Below, piece by piece: positions 71 through 61,739 of a DNA stretch of 64,000 bases. A program made the position numbers and the translations under genes. The notes below the pieces were generated by a model, which did no database searches, had not been told where the DNA came from, and saw only the letters and a list, made by a program, of their open reading frames with translations. The stretch's first letter is position 1. The number at the start of each line of letters is the position of its first letter. Source of the stretch: Euprymna scolopes (taxonomy: Eukaryota); NCBI GenBank assembly GCA_053919585.1, contig CM132785.1. One strand, 5' to 3'.

Positions 71-236
71 CTTGCAGAAGGTGTCGACGTCTTCACACTT
101 ACAGCATTTGGTATTCTCAAATTGATCACCCATCTGATATTTCAAAATTGATCTCCCATCCGCTAATGACCAGGCTCAACATTGCTTCACTTCAGTGATC
201 TAGCAAAAACTGGCGTGTCAACGTGATTATGCCGAT
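71..236 (-). mobile_element. 5S rRNA-derived SINE (SINE3-like), head plus start of body
   Basis: Reverse complement reads GGCATAATCACGTTGACACGCCAGTTTTTGCTAGATCACTGAAGTGAAGCAATGTTGAGCCTGG...GGATGGGTGATC...GAGAATACCAAATGCTGTA, a diverged 5S rRNA. It is followed by GTCGACACC, shared with the copy at 32.6 kb. Internal ~26-bp duplication at 111-160. Confidence 0.8.
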
Positions 237-454
237 AATGAAATGTGTTCTGACAAACGCGTATCACTTGTGTTCCCTCACAAATACTATTGTTGGAACG
301 ATTAATCAGAATCGGAATCGGGAATATCGGAACTTTTAGGTATATCGAAATTTTAAAAAATTTGTGCCTATTTTCCAATGCTAAAAACGATTACGTTGTC
401 TTTTTTAGTAGATTTTGTTTAAAGTAAAATCTTTTATTGCTGGTAATAATTTTC

Positions 455-12711: not shown

Positions 12712-13200
12712 CTGAATTTTTTAGATGAAGATTGATAATTCATATTATTTGGATTCTTTGGACTACTGTTTTCATCTTGAATGTAATTTTCACAACGTTT
12801 CACTCAATGTAACCTCTGACCTTCTTCAGGTGTATCTTGTTGAATTCGAGAATGTTTCTGCCAAACTCGCAACGACCCGTGGCACAATGGGTAGAGTACT
12901 TGGAAAAATCAATGGTAAAAGTGATATTCTTATGAAGGCTGAAGGTTCAATTCTCAGCGTGAGCGACTGAAAATTACAATTGTGAATGACTTAGGACCAC
13001 TATCTAGTCATGGCTGATGGAACGAGAGAATGCTACCCTCGTGAAGTAAATAAAGGGTTCCATTCGAAATTCCATCCAAATTACTAAGTTTGACTGACAC
13101 ATTCACAAGTCCGACATGATCCATCTGAAGAAGGTCGGCGGTTACATTGACCAAAACGTTATGAGAGCAGTATTCCGATGAATGCTAATAATATGAAAGA
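12712..13200. mobile_element. Penelope-like fold-back element (family B) with two inverted hammerhead motifs
   Basis: Minus-strand HHR at ~12791-12832 (CAC-CTGAAGA-AGGTCAG...GAAACGTT-GTG) and plus-strand HHR at ~13122-13163 (CAT-CTGAAGA-AGGTCGG...TTGACC-AAAACGTT-ATG). The family tail (reverse complement of ATCAATCxTCATCTAAAAAATTCAG) is at the left end. Confidence 0.8.
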
Positions 13201-14965: not shown

Positions 14966-15191
14966 GGCGTTGATTAAACTACAGTTAGAATTATACTTTT
15001 GACATAATATGTTGTACATATGCTAAAGTTTATTAAAATGTTTTAAAATCCGAGTCACATTAAGGAGTCAGGATATATATTTATCTCCCTCCTATAAATG
15101 CGGGTCCTCTCACAGTGACCGTTCATGTTTTCAGTACCAATGTGAGAAAAAAATGTAAATAAAAATAAAACTGAATACAAGTAAAATACAT

Positions 15192-15689
15192 TTATTGAGA
15201 TTGTCGGACTGACTTCCTCATCTTGGTTGTTATAGTCACAACGTTCCGACCATTTTGCTCTCCGGCCTTCATCAGGTGTTTTGTATCGAAGTGGGGAACC
15301 GTTTGTTAGGAGTCTCGAACCCAACCCTTTATTATTATAGTGACATATAGCCGAGTGGTCCTAGATGTTGTATCAACGTTTACAGTTACCCAAAGATGCT
15401 GAGTTCAATCCTGAACGAAGGCAGTGCAAAGTAACATTCAAAACAGAGAATCAGCAACTATGTCCCAGAGCCTAGCTGGAGTCCGAACACGGTACCCCCA
15501 TAATAATAATAATAAAGGGTTGGGTTCGAAACTCGTAACAAACGGTTCCCCAGTTTGATACAAAACACCCGATGAAGGCCGGAGGGCAAAACGGCCGAAA
15601 CGTTGTGAATATAACAACCAAGATGAGGAAGTCAGTCCGACAATCTCAATAAATGAAAACACCTCATCTCAAAAATACAGACAATTACT
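15192..15689. mobile_element. Penelope-like fold-back element (family A) with 13-bp TSD and two inverted hammerheads
   Basis: ~150-bp inverted arms (15189-15338 / ~15506-15655), each with an HHR motif, and an unpaired ~34-nt tail AAAACACCTCATCTCAAAAATACAGACAATTACT. TSD AAGTAAAATACAT at 15179-15191 and 15690-15702. Confidence 0.9.
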
Positions 15690-16743: not shown

Positions 16744-19638
16744 TTAAGAGGAAAAATTAAGTTTATAAGTCAAAAGCTTTTGCCAAATTTAAAGATAATA
16801 TAAACATTAATATTTATATAGTAATCCCAACCAAATAAAAAGAAAACAATACAACCAAAATAGAAACTAGTGCTTGTCATAAAACAATTAAAGACTGTAA
16901 ATTACAATTTACAAGACAGGATACTCATTCCCTTAATACGGAGTTTTTGCATACCTGAATAGTTTTCATATCATGCAGTTTCAATTCATGTCAGCGCCAG
17001 TAAATTGATAGCTTTACTATGATATTTAATAATATATTTCTTCTGATGAAAAGAATGCATTCTTTGAAACTCTGCGGATTAAGGAAATTTTTATATTTCT
17101 TTTTGAGTATCCTGTCAAACAATAAATTCTTGCAAATTAGAAGTTTCAGTCTTAAATATATGTTACACATATATATATATAACACAACGAGATGAAATAA
17201 TGTTCTTTTACTTACCATGTAGATAGTATAATATTCCATTTCAGATTCATTGTCAGTTGCAGTGTGCATTGGACAAATGATATTTAATCGATCCCCAAGA
17301 TTTACTACAAGTTTCTGATTATCTGGTTTAAATCTGTAAAAAAAATCAAAGAAAAAAACGTCATTTTTGTTCGATTTCAGTTAAAAATATATGAATGAAT
17401 ATAATTGTTGAATTGGCATACATATAGGTGAAAGCTGATATATTTAAAACATCACAAGACAACTGCAGAAAGAGAAAGAAAGAACGAGTTATGTAGTATT
17501 TGTTAGCATTGGAATGGCAAATAATGTAAAACAAGCAAATTTGGCGCTGAATGACTCAAGGGTTAATGTGACACGGAAACAAAGAAATCATGCACACAAA
17601 GAAATAAACAGAAAAAAGGAGGGCTTGTAATGAATGAAAAATATAAGTTTAAAATAAAAATAAATTATAAAAACGTAAATCTACCATCATAAGAGAGATA
17701 GAGAGGTTGCCGAGGTTGTTAATCCCCAAACATGAAGAGAAAAATTATAAGAAGTTGGTTGTTGCCGTTTCTGGCATATCAACCATTGTTGAGTCATTTC
17801 ATGTCATAACTGTTTATTTATTACGCAAATCTCTCCAGACAAGGCACGAAGCCATTTCATGTAAGGAGCTAACAAGAACGAAAAGATGATTATCGCCATA
17901 ATCTTAACAAAAAAAAGCATTTACCACGATATTTTTCCTAGTGTCATTTTTGCTTAAATTTCTTATTATAATCTATAATTTTTAGTTTTATTGATAGATT
18001 AAAATCAATAAATATTTATCAATGTGTGATAGGTACAAAAAATGGAAAAGTTTTAAACAATAAAATAAATAAATCGTTTTTGGAATTGGAATTCAATTTT
18101 TCCTATACCTGATTACAATTAATTATCTCAATACTAGCTACCATATTTATTTATTTTTTTCAAAATTTCACCTCCAAAAAGTAGTAAAAAACTAAGTAAA
18201 GATGGAAAATGCTATATCCAATTACAATACCCTCATTTCATTTTATTATAGGAATGGATCTCCCCACTGCTTTGTTGGCTTGGAAACTTAGGTAGGAAAT
18301 ACCAGTCAAAAATCCGTTCTTGGCAATCAGCCCAACAGGCTTTGGCATGAGGCTTTCGGGTGGGGCGTGTTTATTGCTTGTTGCCTGAAGCTCTCCTACT
18401 AGAAAATGCCGATGGAGACGCCCAGGCAATTTCTACTAGGCCATAGTTCCTCTTCTTTAAGGGCGCTGGCTGGACATCCCCACTTATTTAACCTTGTGTC
18501 ACATCTTGTGGAGGTGAGCAGCAAGTAAATATATACAAGAAGCTAGCCCAAATAATTTTGATTATTTAAAACACAGACTGTAGGTCCAATGTTTTTTTTT
18601 TTTTTCAACTTTGTTGTTCAGCTTTTTTTGTGCATCTGAAAAGCAATGTGACTTTGAATTACTTTAAATCAATTATGGTCACGTGACCATAATTGATTTG
18701 CAAGCCCATTTGAACAGGGACATGATTGTAGATATGTATGCATAAATGTGAATAGACATAACACAGTGTAAGACAAAGAAATCTTAATCTGTAAGATGTG
18801 GCAGAGAGAAACATTTTAGTGCGAAATGAATTCACAACTCTGACTGTCAACGTGACCTACTTTTGTTAATGAAGTAGATAATCTGTGATCATCAAAATAG
18901 ATATCACTTTTGAGAGGCAAAGCGTGAGGTCCATTCTACAAGCTGTGAAGAGGTTGATAGACAGTCGTGGTGTCAAAGTCTTCGAGGTGTTTCAAATAAC
19001 ACAAAGAAAAGGAAAAACGGTGCCATGATTAGATCATAAGCAACATGGTAAACGAAAACCTTGAGTGGAGATTGCTAACAGCATCTAGGTACCTGAAAAA
19101 GTGTGAAGAATTTGGTAATTTGGAGACAGAAGACAAGAACCGGAATTGATAGGCAGCAAAGACGTGCACGGTGTCATAATTCAGTTCAGATGGCTTCAGT
19201 GACAAGACAAGAATTATTAAGAGCGTTAGCAAGAGGCAAGAATTTAGGAGATGTAAGGGTTGGGAGAATAAAAGTTTCCAGGTGCGAGATATTTGATAAC
19301 GTTTTGTGGGTAAAAAACAACGAACAGAGATTATAAAGTGAATATTGTTCAAAAGACGAGGCTTAATCAGGTAAGAATGAAAAGATGGCGGCTGTTCATT
19401 ATTAAACCTAACCAGAACGAATCGCCTCAACATGCCTCCATTCAATCTTTTTTAAATTTTCTTATTATAAATAAAATTATAAGTTTAAAAAGTCATTTAG
19501 TTTCGACGATGGAAAAAATTTGGTTTGAATAGCGCATTCCTTTCAGTTAAAGTCAAACGATATTGATCAATAGAAATGAGGAGACGATGTGGTTGTTCTA
19601 GTAGTGGAAAGTACAAGAAAACATTCCTTAAGTGAATC

Positions 19639-30266: not shown

Positions 30267-30680
30267 TAAACGAGTAGTGTTGTTTATCAAATCTTAATTA
30301 AAATCAATCTGGTACCAGTTAGCAAAGATATACAAGCCAGTGGGGTAGAAATTTAACGAGAAAGTTAATACTATCGATATAATTAACATTAGAGGTTATT
30401 AGGTTTGGTTTGTTTTGTTTTACGCCATCTTTAAATATTTATTCACACTGTTAGGTTTCGTTTCATGACATATCAACCTTTTCCAGGCTATTTAATGCTA
30501 AATCCAGTCGTTTTCGTAAATAAAAAAAAGCTATTATTCAAGTTTGTTTTTTTTAATTATATATAGATATACATATACTTAGTTATATTTTTGTGAAAAA
30601 AGAATAGCAGAGTGCTCTATTATAAGGAAAAAAAATCTAAATAAGAGCAGAATAGTTATATTTTCAATTTTAAGTAATTT

Positions 30681-30756
30681 AGATAAGCCATCAGTACCAT
30701 CGGTTTCAAACGTGATATTAGGTCCTATTATCAAGCTCTCTTCAGCTGATCTATCT
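30681..30756 (-). ncRNA. Type I hammerhead ribozyme, core intact
   Basis: AGAUAG AUCAG CUGAAGA [GAGCUUGAUAAUAG-GAC-CUAAUAUCACGUUU] GAAA CC-GAU-GG UA^CUGAU GGC UUAUCU. Helix I is AUCAG/CUGAU, helix II is long, helix III is ACC/GGU, and the cleavage triplet is GUA. Predicted cut between + coordinates 30695 and 30694. Confidence 0.75.
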
Positions 30757-30849
30757 CATCTGAGATAGATCGGTTTAAGAGATTGATATTGGGACCTAAA
30801 ACGGTTTCCTAATATCAAGTTTGAAACCGATGGTACCGATGGCTTATCT
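30681..30849. mobile_element. Palindromic double-hammerhead element (Penelope-like family D)
   Basis: The whole segment is a fold-back centred at 30759-30760. The outer 42-bp arms (30681-30722 / 30808-30849) differ at 2 positions, and each half carries an HHR. Confidence 0.8.
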
Positions 30850-31107
30850 TATCTAAACTTCTGAAAATAATGATTATATATATATATATATATATATATT
30901 CATTCATTTTGATTTGATTGTTTTATGGAAAGAATGTTTTTGTTTTAGTCTTTACAAAATATGATTGAGTTTTACAAAGAGAAAGGGAAAACCGTCAATG
31001 TTTGTTGTATTTTAGGTTAGAAAACCGGTATCTTCAGAGAGTCTGATCTAGTTCCACTTATGAATAAACAAAAAGAAAAAAAAGAGGGGATGAAAAAACA
31101 AAACAAA

Positions 31108-32449: not shown

Positions 32450-32733
32450 ATGTATACCAGCAACATTTACCCTAGGCGGGTTGAATCGGCTTCTTCTTAA
32501 GAAGGAAATTTCATGGGAATATCAAGTTCACAAGCAGCCCCAGTCGTATGTATGTCCCAGTCAGGGGAGATAACGTAGGTAGGCTTTTGAGTTCTGGCAG
32601 TGAGGTGTCGACTTCCTTCTACATACAGCGCTTGATATTCTTAAATGGTCATTCTTGCGGTACTAAACAGGCTAAATGTTGCTTAACTTTGGTGATCTAA
32701 CAAGAACCGCTCTGTTAATGTGATTATGCCGTA
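32450..32733 (-). mobile_element. 5S rRNA-derived SINE, near full length
   Basis: The minus strand starts TACGGCATAATCACATTAACAGAGCGGTTCTTGTTAGATCACCAAAGTTAAGCAAC...AGTACCGC...GAATATCAAGCGCTGTA (5S head), then the GTCGACACC body as in 71-236. Confidence 0.8.
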
Positions 32734-33059
32734 TAAGTATAATATGGATTTATAAAATGAACTGAGCACCGAAAGGTCTGAAACATTTGCTGAACATCAG
32801 AAACTTTGTAAACCAGTTTAATTCGTTTTTAAATAATATTTAAAGTTGAAATGAGTTACTGTTTAATATACGAGATCCCTAAAATGATATAGATCGAAAT
32901 AGCAAAATACAACTAAAAACAAACCAAAAAGCACTTTTCCTCTATTTTTTCATTTTCCTTACACAGGTTCTGTTTCCATTCTTCCCGAAACCTGTTTCTT
33001 TGGTCTGCGGTATTGGTGCTATTCTTCAGCTTTTTAAGAAAGCTGTCATTGCGAATTAC

Positions 33060-40983: not shown

Positions 40984-41290
40984 TTTATTGAGATTGTCGG
41001 ACTGACTTCCTCATCTTAGTTGTTATAGTCACAACGTTTCGGCCGTTTTGAACTCCGGCCTTCATCAGGTGTTTTGTATCGAACTGGGGAACCGTTTGTT
41101 AGGAGTCTCGAACTCAACCCTTTATTATTATTACGGGGGTACCGTGTTCGGACTCCAGCTAGGCTCTGGGACATAGTTGCTGATTCTCTGTTTTGAATGT
41201 TACTTTTCACTGCCTTCGTTCAGGATTGAACTCAGCACCTTTGGGTAACTACAAATTTGGAAAACACCTCATCTCAAAAATACAGACAAC
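40984..41290. mobile_element. Penelope-like family A element with 12-bp TSD
   Basis: Inverted body near-identical to the reverse complement of 15405-15652, followed by the forward tail GAAAACACCTCATCTCAAAAATACAGACAAC. TSD TACTTTACGGAT at 40972-40983 and 41291-41302. Confidence 0.9.
41030..41071 (-). ncRNA. Minimal hammerhead ribozyme (PLE-type), core intact
   Basis: CAC CUGAUGA A GGCCG-GAGUUCAAAA-CGGCC GAAA CGUU^GUG: 3-bp helix I, 5-bp helix II, and palindromic AACGUU helix III (dimer-type). Confidence 0.7.
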
Positions 41291-45307: not shown

Positions 45308-45690
45308 CTGAATTTTTTAGATGAGGATTGATAATTTTTTTTTTTTTAATTATTCGAACTACTGTTCTCATCTTGAGTGTTATTTTCACAATGTTTCGGC
45401 CAATGTAACCCCCGACCTTCTTCAGGTATATCTTGCTGACTTTTGGTATCTTTCTATCAAACTTGACAATTTTGCATAGAATTTTGAAGGGAACATTTTA
45501 TTTAACCCACAGGGGTAGCATGCTCTCGTTATTATTTAAAATTCTTACATCTTGGAGCTTTCAAAAAGACAGGCCTAAATATTTATAAATTCGAAAAATA
45601 AACCTGAAGATGAGGTTATATCGGCCCAAACGTTCTGAAAATAGCACTCAAAATAAAAACAGAAGTCTAAATAATTCAAATAACACTAAA
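45308..45690. mobile_element. Penelope-like family B fold-back element
   Basis: Tail at left; minus-strand HHR UAC CUGAAGA A GGUCGG..UUGGCC GAAA CAUU GUG at ~45387-45428; degenerate plus-strand HHR at ~45602-45637. Confidence 0.75.
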
Positions 45691-60409: not shown

Positions 60410-60866
60410 TAATGACTACTGTTCTCATCCTGAGTGTTATTCTCACAACGTTTCGGCCGAAGAAGTCAACCTTCTTCAGATGTATTGTGTGGAAATCGGA
60501 AATCGTTCTGCCAAAATGTGAAATCAATACAAAATTTTCAACAAAACTCTTTATTCAATCCACGGGAGTAGCCTGGTCTTGTTCCGTCGGTCACAACCGG
60601 GTATGGCATAAGTAATTTGCAATTGCATCTTTAGTGTCGCCTGCACTGAAGATTGAACCTTCAACCTCCAGAACAGTGTTCCTTATAACTGAATTTTACT
60701 TTATCCATTTGCCATGGGTCCAGAGTTTGACAAGATACATGATATGTCTGAAGAAGGTCGGAGGTAACACCGGCCGAAAGGTTGTGAAAATAACACTTAA
60801 GATGAAAACAGTAGTCCGAATAATCGTAGTACAAATTATCGGTCCTCATCTCAAAAATAAGAGCCA
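60410..60866. mobile_element. Penelope-like family B fold-back element with two inverted hammerheads
   Basis: Minus-strand HHR CAU CUGAAGA A GGUUGA-CUUCU-UCGGCC GAAA CGUU GUG (~60444-60482, intact). Plus-strand HHR at ~60745-60786 (C15.2>G). Tail CCTCATCTCAAAAAT at right. Confidence 0.85.
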
Positions 60867-61279: not shown

Positions 61280-61520
61280 ACTATATACTGACCCCGTACA
61301 CTCTTAGGAGGCAACAGATATCCTCTGTAAAGGGTGCCTATGCAAAGGTTGCACATTCCCCAATCACTTCCCTCCTGAGTCGGTACGGCCTGATTCCAGT
61401 GGCAAGAAGTAGTCCAGGACGACTGAAAACTGCTAAGATAAACATACAGCACCTGGTATTCCCAAATAGTCACCAATTTTAATACAGACCAGGCTCAACG
61501 TCTATTAGTTTTGGCAACCA
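61280..61520 (-). mobile_element. 5S-derived SINE with a different body
   Basis: Minus strand ACGTTGAGCCTGGTC...GGTGACTATTTGGGAATACCAGGTGCTGTA is the 5S 3' half; the body is unrelated to the other two copies. Confidence 0.7.
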
Positions 61521-61739
61521 TTATACATGGGTGTGTGTGTGTTATCTCCATTTTAAAATCAATAGCTAATTTAAAACTTTAAACTTAAAATATAATGCAT
61601 ATAAAAAAGGAAGCAAAAATATGATCCTTGCAATTTCATACATCAATCTAACCATAAAGTTTGTGGAAGGACCGTGTTTACATATTTACATAGATGTAAT
61701 AAGAAAAATTGATTAGTGGTCTTTATCAAGTTCCTGCCC

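What the first reader, a model, noticed from the sequence alone, without database searches (positions are those of the whole stretch)
30681..30849. Palindromic double hammerhead ribozyme with compensatory covariation
Seen: a ~170-bp fold-back whose left half, read on the - strand, is a complete type I hammerhead (AUCAG-CUGAAGA-helix II-GAAA-CC-GAU-GG-UA^-CUGAU, extendable by AGAUAG/UUAUCU). The right half, read on the + strand, is a sister copy. Its helix I is AUCGG/CCGAU instead of AUCAG/CUGAU (A-U to G-C double change) and its helix II loop is longer, but its core has decayed to UUUAAGA. Known: HHRs occur in Penelope-like pLTRs and retrozymes, mostly as minimal dimer-type motifs. Inference: this one has a real helix III and could cleave as a monomer, and the covariation suggests the fold was selected in the source family. 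A read-through RNA could switch between a long dsRNA hairpin (inactive, a Dicer/ADAR substrate) and the ribozyme fold.
Basis: partly seen in the sequence, partly recalled or inferred. Interest (0 to 1): 0.85.

Follow-up and report, generated by a model that had tools for sequence, protein, structure and literature searches.

The report
Inverted hammerhead-like retroelement scar
This is a small, decayed palindrome made of two head-to-head copies of the tail end of a mobile element in a repeat-rich mollusc genome; one copy still spells a complete self-cutting hammerhead RNA motif and the other does not, and it is a further example of a known kind, not a new RNA switch.

Summary
The sequence observation holds. 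A fold-back spans 30681-30849. Its left half, read on the - strand, is the only stretch in the window that fits a strict type I hammerhead descriptor (about 0.002 hits expected per 64 kb). The right half is a sister copy whose core is destroyed.

- The two copies lie on opposite strands, so no single RNA carries two ribozymes. Each transcript would carry one sense copy plus its own antisense.
- The long hairpin is 60 kcal/mol more stable than any fold containing the hammerhead, so an equilibrium switch is not credible.
- The "compensatory covariation" is one pair in two sequences. Both changes are CpG-to-TpG/CpA transitions in a CpG-depleted genome, so it has no statistical weight.
- Helix III (3 bp plus a triloop) is ordinary for invertebrate type I hammerheads.
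- No Rfam hammerhead model matches.

Best reading: an old insertion scar of a Penelope-type short retroelement. It consists of two 5'-truncated, head-to-head 3'-end copies set in a (TA)n microsatellite. Four other hammerhead-bearing inverted pairs in this window have the same polarity.

The scan has already noted hammerhead retroelements and hammerhead-armed fold-backs elsewhere in this genome, but not this sequence family. I found no other copy of it, so family conservation remains untested.

The parts
30681..30849 (.). Whole fold-back: two head-to-head units, centre at 30759/30760
   Evidence: Inverted repeat I1, 95% complementary outer arms. Hairpin -97.3 kcal/mol, z -14.9.
30681..30758 (-). 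Left unit: complete type I hammerhead-like motif, predicted cut between 30695 and 30694
   Evidence: Only strict-descriptor hit in the window; null expectation 0.002 per 64 kb. Best hammerhead fold -12.2 against MFE -13.3 kcal/mol.
30739..30745 (-). Core box CUGAAGA (C3-A9) of the left unit
   Evidence: Read directly; pattern match.
30708..30738 (-). Helix II of the left unit: 14 stacked positions with 2 mismatches (12 pairs, counting a G-C that closes a 3-nt loop); G.U instead of G-C at 10.1-11.1
   Evidence: Pair table.
30696..30707 (-). GAA (G12-A14) plus helix III: A-U and two C-G pairs, GAU triloop
   Evidence: Helix III contributes about 1.1 kcal/mol.
30761..30849 (+). Right unit: sister copy with a dead core (UUUAAGA at 30774-30780) and a 13-nt loop insertion (30795-30807). 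On its own it folds as a rod.
   Evidence: Alignment A2. Rod MFE -26.5 kcal/mol, z -3.6, using an 8-bp AUCGGUUU/AAACCGAU helix. Hammerhead-like fold -22.4.
30850..30874 (+). 3' tail of the right unit, leading into (TA)n; contains a TTATC duplication at 30844-30853
   Evidence: Aligns with the left tail.
30653..30680 (-). 3' tail of the left unit
   Evidence: Inverted repeat I3, 72%; alignments.
30875..30899 (.). (TA)12 microsatellite abutting the right tail; a degenerate TA-rich stretch at 30556-30591 lies on the left
   Evidence: (D2). Only 2.3% of window positions lie within 30 bp of a (TA)>=6 run.

Best explanation
The locus is an old insertion scar of a short, non-coding, hammerhead-bearing retroelement of the Penelope-like (PLE-dependent, 'retrozyme'/Sm-alpha-like) kind.

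Two severely 5'-truncated copies of the element's 3' end are joined head to head at 30759/30760. Each consists of a hammerhead, a tail of about 25-30 nt, and then TA-rich sequence. This is the junction expected if the reverse transcriptase copied back along its own product or switched template during integration into a (TA)n microsatellite.

After insertion the two arms diverged by about 10-12% plus three indels. The left arm kept a full hammerhead core. The right arm lost C3 and G5. The apparent compensatory change in helix I is two CpG transitions in the left arm.

In the source element the hammerhead would cut element transcripts after GUA. At this locus it is most likely inert, because any read-through RNA contains the perfect antisense in cis and folds into an arm-on-arm hairpin (arms of about 80-90 nt).

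Shown here: the palindrome, the motif, its rarity under chance, the polarity, and the (TA)n flank. Inferred: the retroelement origin, the mechanism of inversion, and which core state is ancestral.
For: - The motif fits a strict type I descriptor, is unique in the window, and has a chance expectation of 0.002 per 64 kb.
- The same window holds at least four other inverted pairs of hammerhead-core repeats, all in (-)(+) order with 5' ends inward: 15189-15655, 45356/45604 and 60414-60816, and 16917-17116.
- The right tail runs into (TA)12 and the left into degenerate TA-rich DNA.
- The literature describes the same features for PLEs: 5' truncation, an inverted 5'-truncated copy at the 5' end, a 30-40 bp tail, a (TA)n target bias, and the hammerhead near the 3' end (PMC8557442). 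Pairs of hammerheads on opposite strands 100-700 bp apart are reported in Schistosoma (PMC4209133).
- CpG depletion in the window (o/e 0.68) explains the helix I double change.
- In simulation, an arm starting from an intact core loses it in 30-55% of runs at the observed divergence. A rod-like ancestor gains a full core in only 0.007-0.03% of runs.
Against: - No second copy of this sequence family was found in the window or in public metagenome, viral or prokaryote collections, so family membership and conservation are untested.
- No Rfam hammerhead model matches, even on the 87-nt stretch alone.
- The 10.1-11.1 pair is G.U, not G-C.
- The hammerhead fold is not the MFE of the left unit, which is no more stable than shuffles (z -0.36).
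- The right unit's 'decayed' core completes a perfect 8-bp helix with AAACCGAU, so a rod-like ancestor cannot be excluded from two copies.
- Helix III and the helix I 3' strand are a tandem 9-mer, which could be a slippage product.
- No RT or GIY-YIG coding remnant was found in 14 of the 22 ORFs of at least 95 aa that were scanned.
- No clean target-site duplication.
Confidence: 0.6

Rival explanations
1. Chance hammerhead look-alike inside a non-ribozyme palindrome, either a MITE-type fold-back DNA transposon or a local inverted duplication. The unit is by origin a rod-like hairpin. A 9-nt tandem duplication created the pseudo helix III. A few substitutions in the left arm happened to spell CUGANGA.
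For: - The right unit folds as a significant rod (z -3.6) with an 8-bp AUCGGUUU/AAACCGAU helix.
- The left unit's hammerhead fold is no better than the MFE of shuffled sequence.
- No Rfam match.
- The tandem 9-mer ACCGATGGT/ACYGATGGC is visible.
- The size of about 170-230 bp and the TA-rich target also suit Tc1/mariner-type MITEs.
- The specific mutational paths are equally improbable in both directions, about 1e-4.
Against: - It needs an ancestor only two substitutions from a full hammerhead with all three helices in register, and then exactly those two substitutions. That is about 1e-3 times 1e-4 per unit by my estimate.
- Against that, hammerhead-core repeats are dense in this very window.
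- The arm polarity is the same as in the four other hammerhead-bearing inverted pairs.
- No TSD, no defined terminal inverted repeat ends, and no further copies in the window.
Confidence: 0.22
2. One reading: a selected, bistable element in which a read-through RNA alternates between a long dsRNA hairpin (Dicer/ADAR substrate) and an active monomeric hammerhead, with helix I covariation as evidence of selection.
For: The core and helices are intact in the left unit. The four helix I/core differences between the arms all shift the balance between the rod and hammerhead folds. A long, near-perfect hairpin would be a plausible dsRNA substrate if it were transcribed.
Against: - There is a 60 kcal/mol gap between the hairpin and any hammerhead-containing fold.
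- The covariation has no statistical power and is explained by CpG decay.
- One core is dead, and the arms carry indels typical of neutral decay.
- This is a single locus with no evidence of transcription.
Confidence: 0.05
3. A hairpin RNA gene (miRNA-like or endo-siRNA precursor) unrelated to ribozymes.
For: Very stable hairpin. Weak sub-threshold matches to several miRNA precursor models.
Against: All such matches are far below the gathering scores (25 bits against 230, 20 against 91, and so on) and are to unrelated plant and animal families, as any long hairpin would give. No conservation data.
Confidence: 0.05

Closest known systems
Hammerhead motifs in the terminal repeats / 3' ends of Penelope-like elements, with their complex tandem or inverted insertions (Cervera & de la Pena 2014, PMC4209133; Craig et al. 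2021, PMC8557442)
   Same: Hammerhead near the 3' end; severe 5' truncation; an inverted 5'-truncated copy joined head to head; (TA)n target; a longer-than-usual helix II; hammerhead pairs on opposite strands a few hundred bp apart.
   Different: PLE hammerheads are mostly 'minimal', with no helix III or a 1-bp palindromic one that works as a dimer. This one has a closed 3-bp helix III with a non-palindromic triloop. Here both copies are truncated to about 115 nt and no RT/GIY-YIG partner is visible.
Metazoan non-LTR retrozymes with type I hammerheads (Cervera & de la Pena 2020, PMC7229834; Li et al. 2026 preprint, 10.64898/2026.07.22.740005)
   Same: Type I topology; low G+C; short non-coding unit; a short helix III as in invertebrate motifs that cleave as monomers; a proposed link to PLEs.
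   Different: Retrozymes are direct tandem repeats of 170-400 bp that yield circular RNAs. Here the two units are inverted, so double cleavage and circularisation from one transcript are impossible. Helix II is much longer (14 positions) and starts with G.U.
Schistosoma Sm-alpha hammerhead SINE-like repeat
   Same: A short non-autonomous repeat carrying a type I hammerhead with a bulged helix I.
   Different: No tRNA-like head was detected here (ARAGORN found nothing). No sequence similarity was assessed, because no reference sequence was available from a tool.
Fold-back / MITE DNA transposons
   Same: A near-complete palindrome of about 170-230 bp in TA-rich DNA.
   Different: No defined terminal repeat ends or TSD and no other copies in 64 kb. 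A MITE origin would not explain a full hammerhead core with all three helices in register.

Membership tests
Hammerhead ribozyme, type I | Conserved core C3-U4-G5-A6-N7-G8-A9, G12-A13-A14, A15.1-U16.1, H17 | tested here: met
   Left unit: all positions present. Right unit: not met, with U at C3 and U at G5.
Hammerhead ribozyme, type I | Three helices around the core in the right register, helix I open | tested here: met
   Helix I 5+6 bp with a 3-nt bulge; helix II 12 pairs in 14 positions; helix III 3 bp plus a triloop.
Hammerhead ribozyme, type I | G10.1-C11.1 pair at the base of helix II (near-invariant in natural motifs; from general knowledge) | tested here: not met
   G10.1.U11.1 wobble in both units, followed by A-U and G.U.
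Hammerhead ribozyme, type I | Match to curated covariance models (Rfam hammerhead families) | tested here: not met
   No hammerhead hit at gathering score or at E<=10 on 64 kb, 331 nt or 87 nt. Caveat: a PLE-type minimal hammerhead in the same window also gives no hit.
Hammerhead ribozyme, type I | The hammerhead fold is the preferred fold of the isolated RNA | tested here: inconclusive
   Best hammerhead fold -12.2 against MFE -13.3 kcal/mol. Pair probabilities 0.1-0.24. MFE z-score -0.36.
Hammerhead ribozyme, type I | Conservation of the core and covariation of the helices across copies | tested here: inconclusive
   Only two copies. One double change, one one-sided change, two mismatches, two pairs lost by deletion. 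Shuffle control 250/500. No further copies found.
Hammerhead ribozyme, type I | Site-specific self-cleavage | not testable with these tools
   Needs in vitro transcription.
Penelope-like-element type insertion | 5'-truncated copy with an inverted 5'-truncated copy abutting its 5' end | tested here: met
   The units join at their 5' ends at 30759/30760 with 3' ends outward. Four other hammerhead pairs in the window have the same polarity.
Penelope-like-element type insertion | Microsatellite, especially (TA)n, target | tested here: met
   (TA)12 at 30875-30899 and a degenerate TA-rich stretch at 30556-30591.
Penelope-like-element type insertion | RT plus GIY-YIG endonuclease ORF, or demonstrable kinship to an element that has one | tested here: not met
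   Fourteen of the 22 ORFs of at least 95 aa in the window were scanned and gave no Pfam match. A non-autonomous element need not carry one.
Metazoan non-LTR retrozyme | Direct tandem repeats, each with a hammerhead on the same strand | tested here: not met
   The two units are inverted, not tandem.
MITE / fold-back DNA transposon | Defined terminal inverted repeats flanked by a target-site duplication, in many copies | tested here: inconclusive
   The palindrome fades into TA-rich flanks with no clear TSD. No other copy in 64 kb.

The most novel reading that the evidence does not exclude
The locus samples an undescribed cephalopod or mollusc family of monomer-type hammerheads with a very long helix II. 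In that family, rod-forming and hammerhead-forming sequence variants (the R and L states, which differ by a coordinated set of four substitutions) are both maintained. The head-to-head copies are transcribed into long dsRNA hairpins that feed ADAR editing or small-RNA pathways.
Probability: 0.05. Interest if true: 0.6.

Novelty: new member of a known kind. Interest (0 to 1): 0.22.

Why it matters
If the source family exists and is active, it adds a monomer-type hammerhead with a closed helix III and a long helix II to the hammerhead-bearing retroelements of a very large mollusc genome. Curated covariance models would miss it. It is also a compact example of the head-to-head insertion products of Penelope-type retrotransposition.

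On its own this locus is a decayed single copy with one dead arm. The methodological lesson is more useful than the locus: a CG step in a helix is matched by a CG step on the partner strand, so two ordinary CpG transitions can mimic compensatory covariation.

Tried and rejected
- Rfam at the gathering score and at E<=10 on 64 kb, 331 nt and 87 nt gave no hammerhead hit, only weak hairpin-type miRNA/snoRNA noise. A minimal hammerhead elsewhere in the window, used as a control, is also missed, so this negative result is weak.
- Sensitive blastn of the units and of the whole 289-bp insert against the window gave only the self and arm matches plus low-complexity noise.
- Exact and gapped pattern scans of metagenome, viral and prokaryote contig collections gave 0 hits, or 14 hits that lack helices I and II and come from unrelated contigs.
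- ARAGORN found no tRNA-like head.
- Pfam on 14 of the 22 ORFs of at least 95 aa found nothing.
- The scan's own index, queried by sequence, was blank.
- I tried to decide from the two arms alone which core state is ancestral. Simulation shows both specific paths are about equally improbable, so the direction rests on prior density of hammerhead repeats, not on these data.
- An assembly artefact is rejected because the arms differ by about 12% and three indels.

Full report
**What is there**

The window is AT-rich (31-37% G+C) non-coding eukaryotic DNA with many microsatellites. Earlier notes of this scan call the genome a 5.9-Gb mollusc, probably a cephalopod, with tens of thousands of hammerhead repeats. 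These are unchecked AI notes and I did not test that number.

At 30681-30849 there is a genuine fold-back. The outer arms 30681-30722 and 30808-30849 are 95% complementary. The 181-nt transcript of either strand would form one hairpin; for the - strand it is -97.3 kcal/mol, z = -14.9. The centre is the dinucleotide 30759-30760.

**The hammerhead reading**

On the - strand the left half reads, 5' to 3':
- helix I 5' strand (30756-30746);
- CUGAAGA (30745-30739);
- a 31-nt hairpin (30738-30708);
- GAA (30707-30705);
- A-C-C, GAU loop, G-G-U (30704-30696);
- A17 (30695);
- the helix I 3' strand with a GGC bulge (30694-30681).

I wrote a descriptor requiring helix I of at least 5 bp, helix II of at least 4 bp, and helix III of A15.1-U16.1 plus 2 bp. 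This is the only hit on either strand of the window, even with looser settings. In 7931 first-order Markov windows of the same composition the strict descriptor hit 16 times, or 0.002 per 64 kb. The real site also has longer helices than the descriptor requires. The motif is therefore not a chance product of random sequence.

**Points against a functional hammerhead**

- None of the Rfam hammerhead models matches, at gathering score or at E<=10 on 64 kb, 331 nt or 87 nt. This negative is weakened because a Penelope-type minimal hammerhead at 41017-41068 is also missed.
- The base of helix II is G.U, A-U, G.U rather than the usual G-C.
- The isolated left unit has an MFE of -13.3 kcal/mol that is not the hammerhead fold and is no better than shuffles (z -0.36). 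The best hammerhead fold is -12.2, with pair probabilities of 0.1-0.24.
- Helix III adds only about 1.1 kcal/mol. Its size is what is described as typical for invertebrate type I motifs that cleave as monomers (PMC7229834), so it is plausible but not special.

**The sister copy and the 'covariation'**

The right half on the + strand aligns to the left unit at 88% identity. It has:
- U at C3 and U at G5, both of which should be lethal for catalysis;
- a GC deletion at the base of helix II;
- a 13-nt insertion in the loop;
- G-C where the left unit has A-U in helix I.

Counted formally on 28 pairs, there is one pair with a change on both sides and one with a one-sided compatible change. Two positions are mismatched in the left unit only, and two pairs are lost by the deletion. 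The shuffle control gives 250 of 500, which means no statistical power.

The double change is TCGG/CCGA in the right unit against TCAG/CTGA in the left. That is CpG to CpA and CpG to TpG. The window shows CpG depletion (o/e 0.68, GpC 1.00). A CG step in a helix faces a CG step on the partner strand, so two ordinary CpG transitions land on one base pair. Three of the four possible combinations keep an RNA pair. The covariation is therefore real as an observation but carries almost no weight as evidence of selection.

**An unexpected feature**

On its own the right unit folds into a significant rod (-26.5 kcal/mol, z -3.6). Its 'decayed' box plus the helix I strand (AUCGGUUU) is a perfect 8-bp complement of AAACCGAU, which is GAAA plus the first half of helix III. 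Helix III and the helix I 3' strand form a tandem 9-mer (ACCGATGGT, ACYGATGGC).

So the four differences in and around helix I and the core all act in the same direction: the right unit favours the rod and the left unit favours the hammerhead. From two copies the ancestral state cannot be decided. In simulation at the observed divergence:
- a rod-state arm gains the full core in 0.007-0.03% of runs;
- a hammerhead-state arm reaches the exact rod state in about 0.01% of runs;
- a hammerhead-state arm loses its core in some way in 30-55% of runs.

The choice then rests on priors. The rod-first alternative needs an ancestor only two substitutions away from a complete hammerhead with all helices in register, which is rare (about 1e-3 per unit by my estimate). 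Hammerhead-core repeats, by contrast, are frequent in this very window. I therefore favour a hammerhead-bearing ancestor, at roughly 3:1 to 4:1 after allowing for model error.

**Why a palindrome**

The two units are joined at their 5' ends, with their 3' ends, short tails and TA-rich DNA pointing outward. The right tail (30850-30874) runs into (TA)12 at 30875-30899. The left tail (30653-30680) leads toward a degenerate TA-rich stretch at 30556-30591. Only 2.3% of window positions lie within 30 bp of a (TA)>=6 run.

Four other inverted pairs of hammerhead-core repeats in the window have the same (-)(+) polarity:
- 15189-15655, with 150-nt arms 93% complementary;
- 45356-45425 with 45604-45669;
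- 60414-60816;
- 16917-17116.

This is the published signature of Penelope-like element insertions: strong 5' truncation, an inverted 5'-truncated copy at the 5' end, a short tail, a (TA)n bias, and the hammerhead near the 3' end (PMC8557442). Hammerhead pairs on opposite strands 100-700 bp apart are already reported in Schistosoma (PMC4209133). The palindrome is best read as a by-product of integration, not as a designed structure.

**Consequences for function**

The two copies are on opposite strands, so no RNA can carry two ribozymes. Each transcript has one sense copy and its own antisense. With the hammerhead enforced, the best fold of the - strand RNA is -37.1 kcal/mol against -97.3 for the hairpin. 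The hairpin also nucleates at a 2-nt centre as the second arm emerges. A ribozyme/dsRNA switch is not credible at equilibrium. The motif could act only if the left unit were transcribed alone from the centre outward, and nothing suggests that it is.

**What could not be done**

No further copy of this family was found:
- in the window;
- in metagenome, viral or prokaryote contig collections (the 14 gapped-pattern hits lack helices and are chance);
- in the scan's own index.

The decisive test, family conservation, therefore remains open. No tRNA-like head and no RT/endonuclease remnant in the 14 ORFs scanned were seen.

**Verdict**

The most likely reading (about 0.6) is a decayed head-to-head pair of 5'-truncated 3' ends of a hammerhead-bearing, Penelope-type short retroelement in a (TA)n microsatellite. 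That makes it a new member of a known kind and of low interest as a single locus. The main rival (about 0.2) is a chance hammerhead look-alike in a rod-like fold-back repeat.

The scan has noted hammerhead retroelements and hammerhead-armed fold-backs before on other DNA of this genome, though not this sequence family.

Noticed in passing
window 15189-15655: A fold-back with 150-nt arms, 93% complementary, and a 167-nt spacer. Each arm carries a Penelope-type minimal hammerhead (GGCC helix II, palindromic AACGUU in place of helix III), and both cores have a point mutation (CCGAUGA on the right arm, GGAAC on the left).
   Followed up: partly
window 41017-41068 (- strand): A single copy of the same family with an intact CUGAUGA ... 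GAAAC minimal hammerhead. It is not detected by any Rfam model, even at E<=10 on 111 nt.
   Followed up: partly
window 60414-60816; 45356-45425 with 45604-45669; 12761-12829: A second, related minimal-hammerhead family (CUGAAGA, GGUCGG...CCGGCC helix II, GAAACGUUGUG). Two occurrences are (-)(+) inverted pairs and one is a single copy.
   Followed up: partly
window 16917-17116: Another inverted pair. The right arm has CUGAUGA, a perfect A/U-rich helix II hairpin and GAAAC at 17043-17070. It lies about 50 bp from a short (TA)n at 17169-17181.
   Followed up: no
window 121-239, 32620-32736, 61441-61538 (all - strand): Three sub-threshold 5S rRNA matches (26.8-31.4 bits; gathering score 38). Two of them align well beyond the 5S part, which suggests a 5S-derived repeat or pseudogene family.
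   Followed up: partly
window 30580-30591 and 30653-30664: An exact 12-bp direct repeat (TAGTTATATTTT) brackets 61 nt (30592-30652). Removing that stretch in silico lets the left tail of the palindrome align further into TA-rich DNA (score 25 against 19). It may be a later small insertion with a 12-bp TSD, or it may be chance.
   Followed up: partly
whole window: CpG observed/expected is 0.68, GpC is 1.00 and TG+CA is 1.09. This indicates methylation-type CpG decay, which matters for any covariation argument in these repeats.
   Followed up: yes
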